In this document: positions 1 through 49,209 of the stretch, in pieces | Position numbering within the stretch: the first letter of the stretch is position 1 | Layout of the letters: each line of letters starts with the position of its first letter | Assembly: GCA_977030845.1 (NCBI GenBank) | Contig: OZ365109.1 | Coordinates: forward strand, 52,700,001-52,764,000 | Direction of reading: 5' to 3' | Source: Fimbriosthenelais zetlandica | Lineage: Eukaryota | Length of the DNA: 64,000 bases | The notes under the pieces: generated by a model | Told to the model about the DNA's origin: nothing | Database searches by the model: none | Seen by the model: only the letters and a program-made list of their open reading frames with translations | Made by a program: the position numbers and the translations under genes

Positions 1-997
1 ACAGACACACCTGTGTATTATTAGAGTTACCCCATCACATCATAGGCGATAAGCGCTGATAAGAATGGGGCTTCAGTAAAATCACGTAGGCCTATACCGA
101 TAGGCCTACCGATGATAGGCCCCTATATAGATCTATATTGATACAGGCTATAGCCTATATAGGCTATAGAACTTAGAAGTACCGGTACCGGTACCGGGAT
201 TCACTTTTTGCATTAGCCTAAAAACAAATAGGCCTACCCGGTAGGCCTATAGGCCTAGATGCATCTAGCCGAGAAAGGGCCCACGTAGGCCTACCATATA
301 TAGGCCTATGCCTACAGTAAGCCTACCAACGAGACTTTCTCAGCTAGCTAGACAAATGATCGGCTCAACTCAACTCAAGCCTCAAGCCAGTCAAGGGGTG
401 AATAATATTCATGTACGGTACCAATGGATTTGTTTTTAGGCTTTCGATAATCGGTACGCTATGTGAATTTACATATTCTAGTTTCGTTGGGCCTACAGAT
501 GAGTAGGCCTATATAGCCTGCCTACAGTACACATGACATCTAGCCTACAATCTACAGTGATCTGCAGTTACTGTAGCCGACACTACATGCTACAGCACAG
601 GGTTTGTATATTATGATCAATGAATGATAGTATCAGTGACTAGCCTACATTGAACCCATCAACATCAAAGTGACCTGAGTTTGAGACTGACATTACAAGT
701 TTCTCCCACTTATTATGGCAACTTTGAGAACTACAGATAATAGATGAATACGGCATTACTATGACACTTCAAAAAACATTATTAAGTTACTTTTAAGTAG
801 AAGAAATCCTGCTGGCTCCCTGGTCCTACTCTCCTCCACGTGCTGTCCGTGCTCCTCGTGTTGACCCGTCTCGCAACGTGTCGCGCGACCTGCCACCAAC
901 CGGCAAAAAGTGAAACTGAGCTTCCCTGGTGAGCAAAACGTGAACTAAACCAAAATGGCGGCCACCGTCTGCTAGAGTCTTGGGGTAACAGTCCTAC

Positions 998-1038
998 CAA
1001 AGATAGTTGAGAATAAGATACCCAACTCCGCCACTTCC
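998..1038 (+). repeat. Left terminal inverted repeat of the P-like element, preceded by TSD GTCCTAC (991-997)
   Basis: Reverse complement of 7188-7228 with 4 mismatches in 41 bp. Confidence 0.92.
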
Positions 1039-1093
1039 TGCGTGCAAGCACCGACGGTAGCGCCATCTAGCAGGGCCTTGGTTCCGCGTCAAA

Positions 1094-4000
1094 ATGGAGG
1101 CGAAGCAGCGGCTTCGGAAAGGTGGACGGCATTGTGCCGCCATCAACTGTATTCACAGCGACAGGAGGAACCTTGGGATGACATTTTTTAGTTTCCCGAA
1201 GGATTTAGAAAGGTAAGGCATTGACAATTATCCTGTTTTCACGATGAGTATTGTTTTTATGTGAGAATAAACATGAGCGGACATGAGCGATAATATGTGA
1301 TTTAAGCGAGTTCCCGCCGCTCTGAGAAAGGACTTTTGGATCTATATCTGGTTGAATTTGTCTTTTGGAAATCATTAACCCATAACATGCAACTTGCATC
1401 GAATATGAATCATATGTAGACGATTAATAAGCAAAAGAGTGATATAAATCATTCGGTACTAGCTTGCCAGACTGTCTTTTATGTTGCCAACAACATTGAC
1501 AATGACATTGGCATGCCACGCCCACAAAATCAGACCAAGACATTGCGACTTGAGCCTTTTGTACAGCTTTAAATATTTTTACAGAAACATCGGATTAATA
1601 TTGATGGTTATGAGGTACTTGACATTTAAAATAAATAAATTTCAGATGTAAAAAGTGGGTTATCAACAGCCGCCGACAGGACCTCGAGAAAGTGCCACTG
1701 GAGCGTCTCCACAAATCTTACGTTTTTTGTCCAGGTCAGTGCCCGCCCAACTTAGTAATTTTGTTTTGTCATTAGCTGTGATTTTGAACACTCTTGTCCT
1801 TTACCCGAAATGGTAGCAATTCTTAATAGATCTATATAACTATATTATCACAGTTCCTTAATTATTTTAATACGTCTGTTAATACATAGTTAATACATCG
1901 TAGGTAGACACTATGTATTCATTGTACTGGTAATGCTTTACCATCTATTCCACAGATCATTTTGAGGAATGCTATTTCTATAACGCCCAGGACAAGAAGA
2001 AGTTGTTGAAGTGGGCTGTACCCACCCTGTTTAATTTGCCAAATGCCCCAGCCACAGTGACAATGAAACGCCCAGCCCCACCTCTGAGATCTATTCCACA
2101 GAAGAAGCCAAAACAGGTATCTAGTCCTCTATTTCCGCCCAATTGCAGTTAGTGATTTTGGAATGGACATTATTATTAAGAAAAGAAAAGAATGATTTGA
2201 AGAAAAGAATTTTTAGAAGTCTGCTTTGTAGGGATGACTAGGGTAGTGGGGTGGTATTTTAACGCAGAAATGAACAAATGTGTTCATATACCGGTAGTGA
2301 TATACGTGGTCTGTCATGGCTAGGCAATTGATAATGCCGGATATCATTCTCTTACAATTATGAAAGAAATCGAACCGGGTTTATGAATTAAACGTTTTGC
2401 TAAATTTGCGTTCAGATTGAAGATGTGGCGTCCATGACGGTGGAACCAAGCCAGGAGGTGTCTGAACCATCACTGCCACAGGATTTTGGTGAGTATCTGT
2501 GATGAGTCACAGTGTCAATTCTATAATCATCTTCATGCATATCAGACGATGTAAGAATGATAATGATAACCGATGGTTAATATTTTTGTTTAAAGAAATA
2601 AGAAATTTGAAAAGAAAAAACAATCGCCTCCGCATGCAGGTAACCTAAGTGAAATAGAAATTTACATGTTGATTTTATTCGCATTTAAATAGCTCACTGT
2701 TGAGCGTTGTTGTTTCGTTGTTGGTTTGTTGAACCATTCTTGTTGAACATTTGCTTTAATATTTTGGCGGATTTTTGTAATAGGATTATGATTCTTTGGC
2801 CTCGTCTTAATGATCAAGGCTTCTCAGGCCATTATGGTGGTACTCCAGACAGTCACATACACAGTTTTTGGTAGTTCACACAATTTAATTTATTTCTACG
2901 GTCATAGAACTAGACCTTATTTTTTACCTTTAATTGTAAAACAATTTTTGGGTTAAAATAAATGACCTGTGATTGTATCACATGAATAGAACTAGCACAT
3001 TTCTTACTTGACAAATCATCATAAAATTTAGTTTGTAATGCAAGGTTTCATGTAATGCAGGTTTGCAGATTAAAGAACCAACCGAGGGCAAAGGCAGTAA
3101 AAACGGCCAGGAAAGTATCCGCAAAGATTGCTGCCAAGAGGAGGATACAGGATCTCCGGGTTCGTTTGGCCGAATTTTTACAAGGGACAGCGCTAGATTT
3201 TGTCATGGCACAAATATCTATGTCTGGGCGTACAGGCAAAGGTACAGTCTTTGTTTTTTTTCGAATTTACTGTTAAAAATCTATGTAATCTAAGTTGGGA
3301 GAAAAAATTGCCATGTAAAGTGTCGAAGTACTTAACCTGTTTTATATTGAATTTAATTTAGCCTTGGGTTCTAATTATAAACAGGTCGGAGGTGGACAGC
3401 ACAAGAGAAGGCATTCTCCCTTTCCCTGCTTCACACAAGTCCTAAAGCGTACAGGCTGCTGCGCAAAGTGTTTGCGCTGCCATCGCCATCAACTCTAAAG
3501 AAGGCGATGGCAAACATCAACATCCGTCCTGGAATAAATGAAAACATCTTAGAAGCACTAAGACTGCGTACATCAGGCATGGATGCCAAGGATAAGTTGG
3601 TGTGTTTGACATTCGATGAAATGTCAATCCGTGAGGCCTTGTCCTATGACAGGAGACTTGATGCTGTAGAGGGATTCCAGCACTTGGTTACCACCAGTCA
3701 TGAGGTAGCCAACCATGCGCTAGTTTTTATGACCAGAGGACTTTTCTCTAAGTGGAAGCAGCCTATAGCTTTCTACCTAGCAAGTGGGAATGTCAGTGGT
3801 GAGAACCAAAAAACACTAGTAATTGAATGTATAGAGAAGCTGAAAAGCATCGGCCTGACGACAATGGTGTGTGTTAGTGACCAGGGTACAAACAACCAGT
3901 GTCTATACAGGTTGTTGGGCATCACACCGGAGAGGCCATACTTTGAACATGACGGCAACAAGATCTATGCCATGTTTGATCCACCACACCTCCTCAAAAA

Positions 4001-5852
4001 TACCCGTAACAATATGAAAAAACATGGCTACTCTGTGGATGGTCATGATGTCTTATGGAGTCACATACAACAGTTCTATGAGCAGGACAGCAGCAAGCCC
4101 ATACGGATGGCACCCAAGCTCACCCACACACATCTCAATTTGCCTCCCTTCAAAGACCTCCGTGTTAATCTGGCAGCACAAGTTCTAAGCCATACAGTGG
4201 CGTCTGGTATGGCATTGATGGCCCAGTGGAATATAATCACTGGTAAGAGTTATCAACTTTCTTTTTAAAGCATATTTCCAATATTCCGTTTGTAATGTAA
4301 TTAACAGAATTAAGTATAATTTCTGACCATCAGTGTAATTTTATTTGTGCTTTGTAAAAGGTAAACATTAATACCTACTGGCACGTGATTGGTTTTCTAT
4401 GTTTTCAGAGGATGCCAAGTACACTGCTCAATTCATTGAAAACATCGACCAGCTGTTCAACAGTCTTAACAGCTCAAGCCCATGCAGCAAGTCGGCTATG
4501 AACCATGCCATCAGCCCGACTTCTGGTCATGTCGCGTTCCTGGAGGAGATGGGCAAATGGATCCAGTCAGTCAAGTCTAAAAGTACGTTAAGCCAGGCAT
4601 ATTACCTATTTAATACCTTCCCTTCGTTGTCAGTTCAATTTCAGAATAATTTTAGGGAATGATTCTTGTCAAACATGACTTTGTCATTCATTATTTGGAT
4701 AATCATTAGCTGATTGGAATTTTTTTCCAATTTACAGGTTCGAGGCAGCCAGCCTGTCTGAAAGGATGGATCATGGCCATCAACTGTGTGCTGCAGCTGT
4801 GGGATACCCTCCACAATCAGCACGGTTTCCAGTACCTTTGCACCAACAGAATCAACCAGGACTGTGTGGAAAATCTGTTTGGTGCCATACGTGCCAAGGG
4901 AGCTGGACATGACAATCCAGATGCTCAACAATTTCGTGCTGCCCTGTCACAGGTGTGTACCTACTGCATATATTATATTATTTGGGTGCCGGTGGGTTCC
5001 TCCAATTTGTATATTTTGAACGAAATGTATGCTCTTGCACTGTTTACTATCTATCAATGTAATTTAGAGTTTATTATTAGTCTTAGAATCATGTGAAGAA
5101 ATCATGTCTAAGTTTATCAAATCCATGTCATTTTCCAGATAATGGTGGACAGTGTTCTCACCCCCGTAACCAACTCTAACTGCGAGCAGGATGTAGACGA
5201 CTTCCTGCTGTGTCTGGGATCGATGTCGACCAGAACTGGAACCTCTGCCAACCCTTTCATTTCCCCAACTATTTCATCTTACGAAACGTTATTGCAACAA
5301 CTACCTGCCCCTGTGAAAAATTTGCTTTCCGTTTGTTCATTTCACACTATTTTAGTTCAGCCAGATGAAACTGATATGTCAATGCAGGAAGAGAATGTAA
5401 TTGCTTATATAGCAGGATATGTAGCACGAAAGTTAAGGGGTCGTGTTTGTATTAGTTGTTATGATAATTTAGTGCAGCAGGTTCCAGAGGGTAGTGCAGT
5501 CATGGATGATAATTTACAGTTCATCAACATGAAGAGTTTGGAAGGTGCTAAAGACGGACTGAAATATCCTAGCAGTGTGTTATTTGATACGATCAAGGGC
5601 ATAGAGAACGGATACCGAAAGATAATTGATGACAAGATATATTGCGAGAATGTCAAAGTAACATTGATTAATTCTCTGTCAAAGAAAGTAGCACTGGAAC
5701 CTTTGTATTGTTCTGCCTGTCACTGCCACACTGCCGTTGTCCATCTTATGGTAAATGTTCGTTTGCATCAGACCATGAAGGAAACAAACCGTGAACTAAT
5801 CCAGACAAAATCACGAAAGAATCGTAAGATAATAAAATTTGACCACAAGTAA
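1094..5852 (+). CDS. THAP-domain P-element transposase (THAP9-like), about 9 exons
   Basis: Exons 1094-1212, 1646-1734 and 1956-2116 splice at GT-AG sites into a THAP zinc finger (CAAINC...FFSFPKD...KKW...FCPDHF...WAVPTLF). Further exons are 2416-2488, about 3032-3241 (acceptor uncertain), 3385-4242, 4409-4582, 4738-4952 and 5139-5852. Catalytic-core motifs are FDEM, SDQG, DPPHLLK and NQDCVENLF. No premature stop was seen in the modelled exons. Confidence 0.92.
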
Positions 5853-6782
5853 TATTTTCAAATTAACTAGTATTTTTAGTGGTTTTCCTATACCGGTAGA
5901 CCTACTGTGAAACCTACTATAATGAATGCTTAATTGTTGTGCCTTGCAGCCTAGGCCTAGGCCTAATGGATCAGTGAAATTATCATAAGGAATTAATTCA
6001 ATTGTATGTAAATATAATAGATTTAATATGGTCTGAGAGCCTGGTATGGAAATCAAATTTAGCGTAGATCCTTCTATATAGATCATTTATTAATTTCCAA
6101 TTGATTTATAATCTACATCGAACATTTATGCCTATTAAAATAGGTGATCATGTAGGCTATATCTAAAATAAATACCGTACATAGGCCTAATGTATATTTA
6201 GTACGGTACCGTAAAGGTCTTGTATTTGCCATTTTTAAAAATGTATTACCGGTACCGGTACTTATCACATTTAGGTGATTCAGATACCAGATTGGCTAAT
6301 TTCCAAATGCAAATTTAGCCAAATGACAAAATAAATTACAAGAAAGCCTTCTTAATTATACCACAGCTTGAGTCAACTCTTGTCTATGATTAATCATATA
6401 GATTTCTATTGAATTTGGTTTGCAGCGGGTAAGAAAAATAATAGAATAAAAAAAGAATAAGGACTTGAAAATAATTTAATCCCATCTAGGGGCCTATAAA
6501 TCTAGCAGCATATCCTAACTAGGCCTATAGACACGGGCCTACAATCTATCACTATTCATGGTTGGCTTGCTGGTACCCTAGGCCATAGGTAGGCTGACTC
6601 TTATCTATGAGGTTTATAACGTTAGAACCCTCATCCATGGATCTGACTAGTAAATATCACGCTACCATAGCCATAGGCCTATTACGATATATCCTTGGTG
6701 GAGCCCTAAGAAATTCAGTCCCCTGTCATTGGCATTATCATGAATTTGCCTATATTGACTACATATTTGGGGATTCACTTTA

Positions 6783-6863
6783 TAATATAAGATAAATATA
6801 AGGCAAAATTCATCTCTAAAATAGTAATATAAGATAAATATAAGGCAAAATTCATCTCTAAAA
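6783..6863. repeat. About 42-bp tandem duplication inside the transposon 3' region
   Basis: taatataagataaatataaggcaaaattcatctctaaaa occurs twice in succession. Confidence 0.85.
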
Positions 6864-7187
6864 CAGTCCAGCTTCAGGGACAGGCCCTGACTCGCTGCAG
6901 ACACGCCCCTCCCCTGACTGAAGAGGCTGATCGCTATCCATATTTGCAGTGATAAATCAGTCAAATTCCATAAAATATATAGAAAACAGTTGCCTTACAA
7001 TGTATTAACAATCGTTCAGAAGCATGACAAAAACCGGAGTCGCAGATATGATAAAACATCGTGTAAACAATGGTGTAAACATGGATGTTTCCATGCTCAT
7101 CCATTGACAATGCATTGACGTTGCCGCGAGCGAACCAAGGCGCTCACAGGTGGCGCTACGATCGCGACGTGCACACGCCGCGCATAG

Positions 7188-7228
7188 GGAAGTGGCGGAG
7201 TTGGACATCTTATTGTCCACTATCTTTG
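7188..7228 (-). repeat. Right terminal inverted repeat of the P-like element, followed by TSD GTCCTAC (7229-7235)
   Basis: ggaagtggcggagttggacatcttattgtccactatctttg is the inverted copy of 998-1038. Confidence 0.92.
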
Positions 7229-7251
7229 GTCCTACTGTTCTCTGGATCATC

Positions 7252-7811
7252 ATGGAAGAAAGTGAGATCAGGTTGGTAAACAAATAGATGTTTTCTAAAA
7301 TTAAAAGTTCGATTATTAGAAACTAACATTTTCGGTGTTTCTGATAACACCTCGATCTTACCAGGCCAGGGCGGTGTCCAAACTCAGAGCTGCATGAGCC
7401 TCATGAGGGCATTGAGGCCATATCATTTACATTTATCTCAATGATGACACTGACCATAGAACTTTATAAGAATTATGCACAGACATGTTAAACTGACGTC
7501 ACTGTTGGTGTTACGGTACCGGGAACATATTATTTATTTAATTTTTAGCCCAGTAAAATCAGGACAGACGTTGCAACCAGCAGGAGATGGAGGTGGTGAT
7601 TCCCATATTCACACTCTCTTCACCCCAGCACCAAAGATGTCAGCTTCCAGTTCCAGGCCTGCACTGCAGCCAGATCCAGTCAGCCAATTCAAACCAATCA
7701 TGATTCCAGTGGATTTACACTCTACCAGTGGCACACGTCCAGGTAGGCCTAAGTTAGAAAAGTTTCAGTGAAAGTCCAGGAGACGTAGGCCTATACCCCC
7801 CACCCACTGCC

Positions 7812-17209: not shown

Positions 17210-43283
<26,074 letters not shown>

Positions 43284-46962: not shown

Positions 46963-48867
46963 TTAATGCAGGGACACAAAGTCTTCTAAAGTTGAAGGTA
47001 TATGGCCTTTGTAAGTCAGCCCCTGGTTCTTCACAGCTCTAGCAGCTATACATTTGAGGGAGATTTTTCTCTGGGTCCTCAGGATGATTTCTGCTACACC
47101 AGTAGCAGAAACATCAAGTGGTGTCTCCTTGTTGTCGTTACAAACATCCATGTGACATCCATATTCAATGAGAAGCATGATAGTGCTGTGAAGAGTCAGG
47201 AAGTCACTGATGGGCTTGGTGTATTTGACAATATTATGGAGTGGGGTATTGCCTTTATTGTCCACGGCGTTCACATCGGCACCACACTCTACCAGCAACC
47301 TGGCTGCTGGTCCATTGGGAAACCCAACCACATCCACGACATGGAAGTCATCCACATACGTGCTCTCGTCTAAAACGAGATGTAACGGAGAAGACCCAGT
47401 CTTCTTCACAGTCAGGTTCAACCGGTTAAAACGGTAGACCAATCTACACAATTCAAACTCATCATCTTTGGAACACTTCACTCTTGAGAGTATGACCAGG
47501 ATATAGAGGGCTGTGAACATGTCACTTTCTAGAACTTCATTCAGCGCTGGTTTGTCTTCAGAACTTGCTTCATCCCATTTTTTCTTATCACGTTCGAGTT
47601 CAAGAAGGTTGTGCTCGAATACTTTCATTGGCATCTTTGCGTCGAGAACAACACCTATGTGCAACATTTGTGAAAAGACTTGAGCAAAGCGCAGCAAGTC
47701 TTTTGCAATCAATCGACCATTTCTCTGTCGAAGCACTAAAGCCCTCATCCACAAGGCAGTACATCGATCAAACCTCGCAGTGTCAGCAAAAACCGCACCT
47801 CTAAATATGATAGGATGTGGAATCTCAGCATTGCTTTCCCCCAGTATCCTCTCTCGAATAATTAAAGCTTCCATATGTATAGCATCAGGATCGTCCTTGA
47901 TTTCTTCCAACTCAATAACTGTCTGGGCTTCACTACGATTTTCATAAGCTTCAATACGTGGCAAGACATTCTTCACTAATATTCCCCCCTTCTCATCCTC
48001 CTGGTGTCGCTTTACCATGGCAATCCACATGTAATAATAAGCTTTGTCTAAATCATAGTTGTCTCTGTCATTAGCAAATGAAGCACCGAGGAGTTCAAGA
48101 GCTTCAATTCCTTGGAGTCTGGAAACTGAAGACATTGAACAAAAATACTCTACAATAGCAGCATGACCACTCTCAGCTGCAATGTGCAATGGTGACATCC
48201 CTTGATCATTTAATAACATGGCAGCCCCATAATCAGCTAGGTCTTTAGTAATGAATAAATGCCCTCTCTCCGATGAAAAATGGAGGGCTGTTGCCCCACA
48301 ATTGGCCTTGGCATTGGGATCTGCTCCCTTTTCGAGCAAATACAACACGACATATCTGTGACCTCGATAGCAGGATATCATCAAGCAAGTATTATTATAC
48401 TTATTTGAAATGTGTAGATCTGCCTTGTGGTCTATTAAGTATTTCACTATATCGAGCCTGCCATCAAAACAAGCTGCTCTGAGGGGCGTGGAGTTGGAGA
48501 AGGTGGTATGGTTCACGTCAGCTCCAAAACTGATTAAAGTTTCCACAACTTGGAGATGACCTGCTGCTGCAGCGCACCACAATGCTGTAGCCCCTTCAAT
48601 GATGTATCCATCAAACTTTACAGTTCCAACCTGCTCTATATCGATGACGAAATGGTTGAGAAGGATTCTCACGGCCTTTTCATGCCCATTGCGATTAGCG
48701 ATAATGAAAGGTGTGGTTTTCTGCGAGTCTTCTTCAGTCTGGGCTTGAAGAACTTCATTGACTTCAGAGGGTGTGAGCTTCCATAAAAGGGCATACAAAC
48801 TGAGTGCTTTCCCATCTCTAGCAGCTATAAAGACACTCTTCTTCAGCTCCGTGATCTTACTTTCCAT
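46963..48867 (-). CDS. FEM1B: Protein fem-1 homolog B (ankyrin-repeat CRL2 substrate receptor), single coding exon, 634 aa
   Basis: Uninterrupted ORF from MESKITEL with ankyrin repeats (GTVKFDGYIIEGATALWCAAAAGHL, STPLRAACFDGRLDIVKYL, NKYNNTCLMI, AKANCGATALHF), a TPR-like segment and C-terminal SLKCIAARAV (BC/VHL-box-like). Confidence 0.93.
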   Translation of the reverse strand: MESKITELKKSVFIAARDGKALSLYALLWKLTPSEVNEVLQAQTEEDSQKTTPFIIANRNGHEKAVRILLNHFVIDIEQVGTVKFDGYIIEGATALWCAAAAGHLQVVETLISFGADVNHTTFSNSTPLRAACFDGRLDIVKYLIDHKADLHISNKYNNTCLMISCYRGHRYVVLYLLEKGADPNAKANCGATALHFSSERGHLFITKDLADYGAAMLLNDQGMSPLHIAAESGHAAIVEYFCSMSSVSRLQGIEALELLGASFANDRDNYDLDKAYYYMWIAMVKRHQEDEKGGILVKNVLPRIEAYENRSEAQTVIELEEIKDDPDAIHMEALIIRERILGESNAEIPHPIIFRGAVFADTARFDRCTALWMRALVLRQRNGRLIAKDLLRFAQVFSQMLHIGVVLDAKMPMKVFEHNLLELERDKKKWDEASSEDKPALNEVLESDMFTALYILVILSRVKCSKDDEFELCRLVYRFNRLNLTVKKTGSSPLHLVLDESTYVDDFHVVDVVGFPNGPAARLLVECGADVNAVDNKGNTPLHNIVKYTKPISDFLTLHSTIMLLIEYGCHMDVCNDNKETPLDVSATGVAEIILRTQRKISLKCIAARAVKNQGLTYKGHIPSTLEDFVSLH

Positions 48868-49209
48868 TATTGGACATCCACATGGATGAAATGTGAGTAT
48901 AACGATCAAACTTTTCGGGAAAACCCGTCAAAAAGGTTAGGTTTAAAATACCTTCCGCCTACCACTAATCGGGGATATCCCTTCGGGCCTGCGCAGATGA
49001 AAACGAGGCTCGGGAATTCCCTCTACCGGAAGTTCCCTATTAATTTCAGTTCCTTTCCCCAAGCAAAGGGGGCAGTAGTTTACAGTGGAGTCCTGTCCCT
49101 GGGACAGACTAAAAGCCACTGATATGGTTTATTCACAAAACTGTACCGGGGTACCCATAGCCTAGGCCTAATATAATACCGTACTAATTTTTAGTGAAAT
49201 TTATATAAA

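What the first reader, a model, noticed from the sequence alone, without database searches (positions are those of the whole stretch)
991..7235. Apparently intact, intron-rich P-superfamily transposon with a Galileo-type 7-bp target duplication
Seen: 41-bp TIRs (37/41) with CAAAG..CTTTG ends, a perfect 7-bp TSD GTCCTAC, and a 9-exon THAP transposase retaining D/D/E motifs. The reconstructed empty site aaca-GTCCTAC-tgtt is a 15-bp near-palindrome. Known: the Drosophila P element makes 8-bp TSDs, whereas Galileo (same superfamily) makes 7-bp TSDs with a palindromic GTAGTAC consensus but has long foldback TIRs. Inference: this element combines short TIRs with a 7-bp GTnnnAC target and may be a recently active invertebrate family and a candidate genetic tool.
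Basis: partly seen in the sequence, partly recalled or inferred. Interest (0 to 1): 0.8.

Follow-up and report, generated by a model that had tools for sequence, protein, structure and literature searches.

The report
Intact-looking P-type transposon, 7-bp duplication
This is a full-length, apparently coding-competent jumping gene of the well-known P-element superfamily, sitting in the genome of a spiralian invertebrate; its 7-base target duplication and palindromic target site are already known for fly relatives, so it is a well-preserved new member and not a new kind.

Summary
Window 998-7228 is a 6,231-bp element with 41-bp terminal inverted repeats (37/41 identical, ends CAAAG/CTTTG). Weaker inverted similarity runs to about 100 bp. 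A perfect 7-bp direct repeat, GTCCTAC, flanks it.

It encodes a P-type transposase: a THAP zinc finger, a coiled coil, and an RNase H domain split by a GTP-binding domain. D/D/E residues align to D230, D303 and E531 of the Drosophila enzyme.

It aligns end to end with full-length relatives. Splicing is unverified because no RNA runs were listed.

Two relatives from other assemblies, at 44-53% identity, also have perfect 7-bp duplications, so 7 bp is a trait of the clade.

The rebuilt empty site matches the published P-group target motif ANAGT...ACTNT exactly. The fly element 1360 already combines short repeats with a 7-bp GTnnnAC target, so that combination is not new.

Five or six intron positions are shared with relatives whose flanks are not syntenic. 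This favours an old intron-bearing transposon lineage over a domesticated gene.

Copy number, age and mobility in this genome could not be tested. Verdict: new member of a known kind, of moderate to low interest.

The parts
991..997 (.). Left copy of the 7-bp target-site duplication, GTCCTAC
   Evidence: Read directly. It is identical to 7229-7235 and abuts the TIR terminus.
998..1038 (+). Left terminal inverted repeat (41 bp, starts CAAAG). Weaker inverted similarity continues to about 1097.
   Evidence: It matches the right arm at 37/41, and bases 25-41 (CCAACTCCGCCACTTCC) are identical at both ends.
1094..1212 (+). Coding exon 1: the ATG and the first two cysteines of the THAP zinc finger
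   Evidence: tblastn to P0126 and P0134; donor AAG|gtaagg.
1646..1734 (+). Coding exon 2 (THAP, middle part)
   Evidence: The intron position at aa ~40 is shared with L001, L002 and L003.
1956..2116 (+). Coding exon 3 (the C-x2-H and AVPTLF of THAP, then a Pro-rich linker)
2416..2488 (+). Coding exon 4 (acidic/Pro linker), inferred from splice sites only
   Evidence: Acceptor ttcag| and donor |gtgagt keep the frame. No homolog support.
2596..2639 (+). Coding exon 5 (start of the LKRK coiled coil)
   Evidence: It aligns to the conserved LKRK..L....R coil of full-length relatives.
3061..3241 (+). Coding exon 6 (coiled coil and linker)
3385..4242 (+). Coding exon 7: RNase H N-terminal half (D300, D388 in my numbering) and most of the GTP-binding insertion domain
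   Evidence: Pfam PF21787 at 1e-34 and PF21788 at 4e-10. Aligns to 6p5a residues 184-416, with D230 and D303 matched.
4409..4582 (+). Coding exon 8 (end of the GTP-binding insertion domain)
   Evidence: Pfam PF21788.
4738..4952 (+). Coding exon 9: RNase H C-terminal part carrying the catalytic E (VENLFG)
   Evidence: Pfam PF21789 at 3e-9. Aligns to 6p5a 504-556, with E531 matched.
5139..5852 (+). Coding exon 10 (P-transposase/THAP9 C-terminal domain) with stop TAA at 5850-5852
   Evidence: Pfam PF12596. The conserved NRK..K..H tail aligns with relatives.
5853..7187 (+). 3' non-coding part of the element, with a 26-nt direct repeat at 6800-6825 and 6842-6867
   Evidence: No homolog or Pfam signal; repeat found.
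7188..7228 (-). Right terminal inverted repeat (ends CTTTG). Weaker inverted similarity starts at about 7124.
7229..7235 (.). Right copy of the 7-bp target-site duplication, GTCCTAC
   Evidence: Read directly.

Best explanation
Window 998-7228 is one full-length, autonomous-type copy of a P-superfamily cut-and-paste DNA transposon in a spiralian invertebrate genome. It carries a 10-exon gene for an 875-aa transposase with four parts: an N-terminal THAP zinc finger, a coiled coil, an RNase H-like catalytic domain (D300, D388, E611) interrupted by a GTP-binding insertion domain, and the P/THAP9 C-terminal domain. By analogy with the Drosophila P transposase, oligomers would bind sites inside the ~100-bp imperfect inverted ends and pair the ends in a GTP-dependent step. 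They would then excise the element and join it to a target with cuts staggered by 7 bp, and repair of those cuts gives the GTCCTAC duplication. The target was a palindromic site of the P-group type, ANAGT-nnn-ACTNT, 16 bp upstream of a host start codon. Shown here: the anatomy, the domains, the catalytic residues, the uninterrupted frame under GT-AG splicing, and 7-bp duplications in two further relatives. Inferred: the splicing itself, GTP dependence, which end sequences the THAP domain binds, and whether the copy can still move.
For: TIRs and a perfect 7-bp TSD. Pfam TNP-like RNaseH_N, GBD, RNaseH_C and Tnp_P_element_C. phmmer to P transposase 6p5a at 2e-25, with D230, D303 and E531 aligned to D, D and E (residue roles from PMC7776569). 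An 875-aa open frame with ten canonical GT-AG exons, where 0 of 2000 shuffles of the CDS are stop-free. THAP C2CH signature plus AVPTLF. End-to-end alignment with nine full-length relatives, with conserved columns retained. Relatives L003 (TIR 23/23, TSD GTTTTAT) and L012 (TIR 33/33, TSD GGGAAAG) also have perfect 7-bp TSDs. Termini are related: CAAAGAT.. in the window, CAACGAT../CAAAGAT.. in L003 and L002. The empty site matches ANAGT...ACTNT (PMC3276498), a pattern found at about 1.6e-5 of window positions. Flanks are not syntenic with the relatives' flanks, and relatives are multi-copy within single assemblies.
Against: Only one copy is visible. No other copy, fragment or MITE lies in the other 58 kb, and the genome itself could not be searched. 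No RNA or DNA runs were listed, so splicing, expression and insertion polymorphism are untested. Exon 4 has no homolog support. The two TIRs differ at 4 of 41 positions. One relative (L002) has good TIRs but non-matching flanks, GTGTAAG versus GTGCTAC.
Confidence: 0.85

Rival explanations
1. A domesticated THAP9-like host gene that still carries relic TIRs and a TSD, as proposed for the zebrafish Pdre2/zfTHAP9 locus. On this reading the intact frame and conserved introns reflect host selection, not recent mobility.
For: The frame is intact despite nine introns. Several intron positions are conserved with relatives at <=57% identity. Only one copy was seen. There is a precedent: zebrafish THAP9 is flanked by 13-bp TIRs and an 8-bp TSD.
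Against: The TSD is perfect and the TIRs are long. The flanks show no synteny with L001-L003. The intron-sharing relatives are themselves TE-like: they have TIRs and a TSD, L003 has a frameshifted C-terminus, and several divergent copies occur per assembly. The element sits 16 bp upstream of another gene's ATG, which is typical of an insertion.
Confidence: 0.08
2. A real P-type insertion that is already dead. On this reading the frame is open only under an optimistic splice model, or the ends or protein carry inactivating substitutions that sequence alone does not reveal.
For: Splicing is unverified. Exon 4 is supported by splice sites only. Intron 6 (143 nt, not a multiple of 3) is absent in L001-L003, so a failure to splice it would break the frame. 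There are 4 mismatches between the TIRs. No sister copies are visible.
Against: Every junction is a canonical GT-AG that restores the homologous residues without gaps, for example ..GKG|RRW... All catalytic and invariant columns are retained.
Confidence: 0.3
3. The 7-bp direct repeat is a coincidence or part of the element. The true duplication would then be 8 bp, as in canonical P, or absent.
For: The flanks themselves form an inverted repeat (AACAGT / ACTGTT), so the repeat finder extends the arms to 987-1038 and 7188-7239.
Against: A 7/7 direct repeat at the exact junctions has a chance of about 6e-5. The 8-bp registers need a mismatch and give asymmetric termini. If the arms were extended, the outer flanks (TTGGGGT versus CTCTGGA) would share no duplication. 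Two relatives show perfect 7-bp TSDs. Palindromic flanks are the published P-group target motif.
Confidence: 0.03

Closest known systems
Drosophila 1360 (Hoppel/ProtoP), P superfamily
   Same: Short TIRs, a 7-bp TSD, and a GT...AC-ended palindromic target (modal TSD 7 bp, motif GTTNAAC, P-group halves ANAGT/ACTNT; PMC3276498; PMC3698922).
   Different: 1360 is reported as intronless (PMC3698922), whereas this element has nine predicted introns and is 6.2 kb long. It is in a spiralian host, not a fly. The phylogenetic relationship was not tested because no 1360 protein was available in the tools.
Drosophila melanogaster P element and its transposase (PDB 6p5a)
   Same: THAP + coiled coil + RNase H with a GTP-binding insertion + C-terminal domain. 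D230, D303 and E531 are conserved. TIRs of a few tens of bp with subterminal inverted blocks. A palindromic target: the P motif GTCCGGAC versus GTCC-TAC here. Insertion next to a gene's 5' end.
   Different: 8-bp TSD, 2.9 kb, 4 exons, 31-bp TIRs. The core exon aligns to 6p5a at E = 2e-25.
Galileo (Drosophila), P superfamily
   Same: A 7-bp TSD with the GTAGTAC/GTANTAC consensus, and a 15-bp palindromic target motif made of the 7 bp plus 4 bp on each side (PMC4168063).
   Different: Galileo has long, internally repetitive foldback TIRs (hundreds to >1000 bp) and no introns. Its target half-sites are AANGT/ACNTT, whereas this site fits the P/1360 form ANAGT/ACTNT.
Uncharacterised P-transposase-like elements of other invertebrates (loci L001, L002, L003, L012; mollusc proteins annotated 'transposable element P transposase')
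   Same: 44-57% identity in the catalytic core. Related termini in L002/L003 (CAAAGAT/CAACGAT; L012 starts CACAGAC). 7-bp TSDs in L003 and L012. Intron positions at aa ~40, ~160, ~508, ~566 and ~638 shared with L001-L003. Named relatives come from Plakobranchus, Elysia and Batillaria.
   Different: No relative closer than 57% identity was found. The window has a private intron at aa 222. Element sizes differ: 3.7 kb (L012), 9.6-10.1 kb (L003, L002), 6.2 kb here.
Zebrafish Pdre2/zfTHAP9 and vertebrate THAP9
   Same: A P-type transposase gene with introns, flanked in zebrafish by TIRs and a TSD.
   Different: Pdre2 has 13-bp TIRs and an 8-bp TSD. Human THAP9 has lost its ends.

Membership tests
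P superfamily of DNA transposons | Transposase with a TNP-like RNase H fold interrupted by a GTP-binding insertion domain | tested here: met
   Pfam PF21787 (1e-34), PF21788, PF21789 and PF12596 on the exon translations. phmmer to 6p5a at 2e-25.
P superfamily of DNA transposons | Catalytic D, D, E triad (D230, D303, E531 in DmTNP) | tested here: met
   FDEM, VSDQGTNN and VENLFG align to D230, D303 and E531 of 6p5a. Residue roles are from PMC7776569.
P superfamily of DNA transposons | N-terminal THAP (C2CH) DNA-binding domain | tested here: met
   C14-x4-C19-x48-C68-x2-H71 plus AVPTLF at residue 90 in the spliced model. It aligns with relatives whose precomputed Pfam includes PF05485. The Pfam THAP model itself was not run on the spliced domain, because it is split over three exons.
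P superfamily of DNA transposons | Terminal inverted repeats flanked by a 7-9 bp target-site duplication | tested here: met
   41-bp TIRs at 37/41 and a perfect 7-bp TSD. The 7-9 bp range is from PMC3698922.
P superfamily of DNA transposons | Palindromic target motif ANAGT...ACTNT | tested here: met
   The empty site aACAGTcctACTGTt matches both halves. This rests on a single insertion.
Galileo family | Long foldback-like, internally repetitive TIRs | tested here: not met
   Inverted similarity ends after about 100 bp, and no internal tandem repeats occur in the ends.
Galileo family | 7-bp TSD with a GTAnTAC consensus | tested here: inconclusive
   The length matches. GTCCTAC shares GT..TAC, but there is one insertion only, and the relatives have GTTTTAT and GGGAAAG.
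1360/Hoppel family | Clustering with 1360 in a transposase phylogeny | not tested
   No 1360, Galileo, DmP or THAP9 full-length sequences with identifiers were obtainable for a tree. Only the 7-bp TSD and short TIRs are shared.
Domesticated THAP9 genes | Single-copy, syntenic across species, without functional ends | tested here: inconclusive
   TIRs and a TSD are present, and there is no synteny with L001-L003. Copy number in this genome and synteny with close relatives could not be examined.

The most novel reading that the evidence does not exclude
This is a currently mobile P-type transposon of a spiralian, belonging to an old lineage that has carried the same spliceosomal introns through its spread across species. 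As with the Drosophila P third intron, one or more of these introns could gate transposase production by tissue-specific splicing. The 7-bp-stagger enzyme would also keep the fly P/1360 target motif across phyla.
Probability: 0.2. Interest if true: 0.55.

Novelty: new member of a known kind. Interest (0 to 1): 0.3.

Why it matters
P elements are the classic animal DNA transposon and a major genetic tool, yet outside Drosophila few P-type elements have defined ends, duplications and an intact gene. This copy and the two relatives characterised here give three sets of complete ends with 7-bp duplications. Together they show that the 7-bp stagger is widespread in invertebrate P-type elements. In the window's single insertion the fly P/1360 target motif ANAGT...ACTNT recurs as well. 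The shared intron positions suggest a long-lived intron-bearing transposon lineage. If the encoded protein is active, it would be a candidate vector for spiralian animals, which lack such tools. None of this changes how the superfamily is understood.

Tried and rejected
1. I looked for other copies or MITEs in the rest of the window with blastn at word size 9 and found none.
2. I scanned JGI metagenome contigs with the terminal 22-mer. The six hits are all chance matches whose similarity stops at the pattern.
3. I looked for sequencing runs with a 2.5-kb stretch and with exon 7 alone. None was listed, so no RNA-seq or empty-allele test was possible.
4. I searched the scan's earlier notes by sequence and by words. 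Nothing on this family turned up.
5. Several relatives could not give ends. L001 is cut by the contig end inside its right inverted repeat, L004 is truncated on the left, and L005 is an intronless, frameshifted copy with no recognisable TIRs. Six other loci came back without DNA.
6. I considered 8-bp TSD registers and rejected them, because each needs a mismatch and gives asymmetric termini.
7. I considered extending the element by the palindromic flanks and rejected that, because no duplication lies outside them.
8. I considered an 8-exon model that skips exons 4 and 5. It keeps the frame and cannot be excluded, but it loses the conserved LKRK coil start.
9. A phylogeny against P, 1360, Galileo and THAP9 was not built, because no labelled full-length references were retrievable. 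The listing of cluster members gave no names.
10. I recalled from memory that P-superfamily termini follow CANRG. I could not confirm this in the paper library, so it is not used as evidence.
Full report
**The observation**

The sequence at 991-7235 is as described. The element proper is 998-7228 (6,231 bp). Its first 41 bases and the reverse complement of its last 41 match at 37 positions, and both ends start CAAAG. A scan of the whole window for the left arm with up to 3 mismatches finds only the arm itself, and dinucleotide shuffles expect 0 matches.

With one 10-bp indel, the inverted similarity continues to about 100 bp from each end. It includes two well-conserved blocks, GTAGCGCCAyCT and GCCTTGGTTC. 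The transposase ATG at 1094 lies just inside this region.

GTCCTAC occurs immediately outside both termini, at 991-997 and 7229-7235. Either 8-bp register needs a mismatch and would make the termini asymmetric. The rebuilt empty site is AACAGTCCTACTGTT, with perfect 6-bp palindromic arms around CCT. About 6e-4 of 15-mers in this window have such arms.

**The gene**

Pfam on the individual open frames finds TNP-like RNaseH_N (1e-34), the TNP-like GTP-binding insertion domain, TNP-like RNaseH_C and Tnp_P_element_C. I used full-length relatives from the 1.84-billion-protein representative search as guides for tblastn, and I read the junctions base by base. This gave ten coding exons:

- 1094-1212
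- 1646-1734
- 1956-2116
- 2416-2488
- 2596-2639
- 3061-3241
- 3385-4242
- 4409-4582
- 4738-4952
- 5139-5852

All nine introns are GT-AG. The joined CDS is 2,628 nt and encodes 875 aa without a stop, whereas 0 of 2000 shuffles of the CDS are stop-free.

The difference lies in the weakly conserved linker between the THAP domain and the coiled coil. Exon 4 rests on splice sites alone. Exon 5 supplies the start of the LKRK coiled coil that is conserved in relatives. Skipping both exons (117 nt) also keeps the frame, so the frame stays open under either model. Splicing is not verified by RNA, because no sequencing run was listed for the element.

**The protein**

- The spliced N-terminus has the THAP signature C-x4-C-x48-C-x2-H followed by AVPTLF.
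- The core exon aligns to the solved Drosophila P transposase (6p5a) at E = 2e-25. FDEM falls on D230 and VSDQG on D303.
- Exon 9 aligns with VENLFG on E531.
- These three residues are the catalytic triad (PMC7776569).
- The 875-aa model aligns end to end with nine full-length relatives, and the near-invariant columns are retained through to the C-terminal NRK..K..H tail.

**Relatives and the 7-bp duplication**

The nearest protein among 5.8 billion is only 57% identical over the core exon. The window's own genome and close kin are therefore not in the collections, and copy number in this genome could not be measured. Nothing else in the 64-kb window resembles the element.

I fetched DNA around the relatives where it was available. 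Four complete elements can now be compared:

| Locus | Source | Element | TIRs | Termini | Flanks |
|---|---|---|---|---|---|
| Window | this genome | 6,231 bp | 37/41 | CAAAGATAGT | GTCCTAC / GTCCTAC, perfect 7-bp TSD |
| L003 | ENA ERZ25084518 | 9.6 kb | 23/23 | CAACGATCAT | GTTTTAT / GTTTTAT, perfect 7-bp TSD |
| L012 | ENA ERZ21781341 | 3.7 kb | 33/33 | CACAGACGC | GGGAAAG / GGGAAAG, perfect 7-bp TSD |
| L002 | ENA ERZ26052449 | 10.1 kb | 34 bp at 94% | CAAAGATCGT / CAACGATCGT | GTGTAAG / GTGCTAC, no clean TSD |

- The protein cluster of L012 has 100 member sequences.
- The L002 flanks may reflect later rearrangement; this was not resolved.
- Three of four complete elements, spanning 44-53% identity to the window's protein, therefore have perfect 7-bp duplications. 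Seven bp is a property of this clade and not an accident of one copy.
- GTnnnAC is not obligatory, since two of the three TSDs do not fit it.

**Transposon or domesticated gene**

tblastn of the window's protein on the relatives shows shared break points at aa ~40, ~160, ~508, ~566 and ~638 in L001, L002 and L003, and also at ~69 in L001. The window's intron at aa 222 is private. L005 and L012 are intronless or nearly so.

Conserved introns could suggest a host gene. Several observations argue against that:

- The flanks of the window share nothing with the flanks of L001-L003.
- L003 has ends, a TSD and a frameshifted C-terminus.
- Single assemblies hold several divergent copies, such as P0002/P0014/P0020 and P0011/P0018.

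The better reading is an old intron-bearing lineage of P-type transposons. Domestication of this particular copy cannot be excluded without the rest of the genome.

**Comparison with what is known**

- The D. melanogaster P element makes 8-bp duplications (motif GTCCGGAC).
- 1360 makes 7-bp duplications (GTTNAAC).
- P-group elements share the target half-sites ANAGT and ACTNT (PMC3276498).
- Galileo makes 7-bp duplications (GTAGTAC/GTANTAC) inside a 15-bp palindromic motif, but it has long foldback TIRs and no introns (PMC4168063; PMC3698922).
- The D. buzzatii P element has seven exons and 8-9-bp duplications.
- Zebrafish Pdre2 has 13-bp TIRs and an 8-bp duplication.

The window's site, aACAGT-cct-ACTGTt, matches both published half-sites exactly. 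That pattern occurs at about 1.6e-5 of positions in the window. The element therefore behaves like a textbook P-superfamily member. It is not a Galileo, because the long foldback TIRs that define Galileo are absent.

**Host and context**

An intronless Fem-1B gene in the window has its best named matches, at 56-58% identity, in gastropods and Lingula. Unnamed matches reach 82%. The host is therefore a spiralian invertebrate that the tools did not name.

Mollusc proteins in the same transposase clade are annotated 'transposable element P transposase'. The insertion lies 16 bp upstream of an ATG at 7252 on the same strand. Insertion next to a gene's 5' end fits the known preference of P elements for promoter regions (PMC7776569).

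**Verdict**

This is a real, well-preserved, apparently coding-competent P-superfamily transposon copy with a 7-bp target duplication. It is a new member of a known kind. Whether it belongs to a recently active family, and whether the protein works, remain open. Settling that needs the whole genome, RNA data and an excision assay.

Noticed in passing
window 940-990 and 7236-7275: The element sits between a flank carrying AAAATGGCGGCC and an ATG at 7252, 16 bp after the right TSD, followed by a GT donor. From memory, the AAAATGGCGGCC motif resembles a YY1-type core-promoter motif. The transposase gene has the same orientation as the host gene, so it lies directly downstream of the host's presumed promoter.
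   Followed up: partly
window 1055-1094 and 7124-7170: Two subterminal blocks, GTAGCGCCAyCT and GCCTTGGTTC, are conserved between the two ends beyond the 41-bp TIR. Bases 25-41 of the TIR (CCAACTCCGCCACTTCC) are identical at both ends, while neighbouring bases differ. These are candidate transposase (THAP) binding sites or promoter elements. The GCGCCAyCT core also resembles insulator/YY1-type motifs, which I recall from memory and did not test.
   Followed up: no
L002 5069-15158: This 10-kb relative has good 34-bp TIRs, but its flanks do not match (GTGTAAG versus GTGCTAC). The right flank fits GTnnnAC. This could reflect ectopic recombination between two copies, as described for Galileo and BuT5, or decay.
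   Followed up: no
L012 8792-12473: A compact 3.7-kb P-type element with perfect 33-bp TIRs and a perfect 7-bp TSD. Its protein cluster holds 100 member sequences, which looks like a young, high-copy family in that assembly (ENA ERZ21781341). This copy shows a frame change near aa 527.
   Followed up: partly
window 46963-48909 (- strand): An intronless 648-aa Fem-1 homolog B gene with ankyrin repeats. The best unnamed match is 82% identical, and the best named matches, at 56-58%, are gastropods and the brachiopod Lingula. I used it only to place the host among spiralians.
   Followed up: partly
window 6800-6867: A 26-nt direct repeat (AAGGCAAAATTCATCTCTAAAAyAGT) occurs twice, 42 bp apart, in the element's 3' non-coding region. 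Its function is unknown.
   Followed up: no
window 37517-37864 (- strand): This open frame is made of tandem copies of a ~17-aa unit (..[13 protein letters not shown]..). It is probably a translated minisatellite and not a gene.
   Followed up: no
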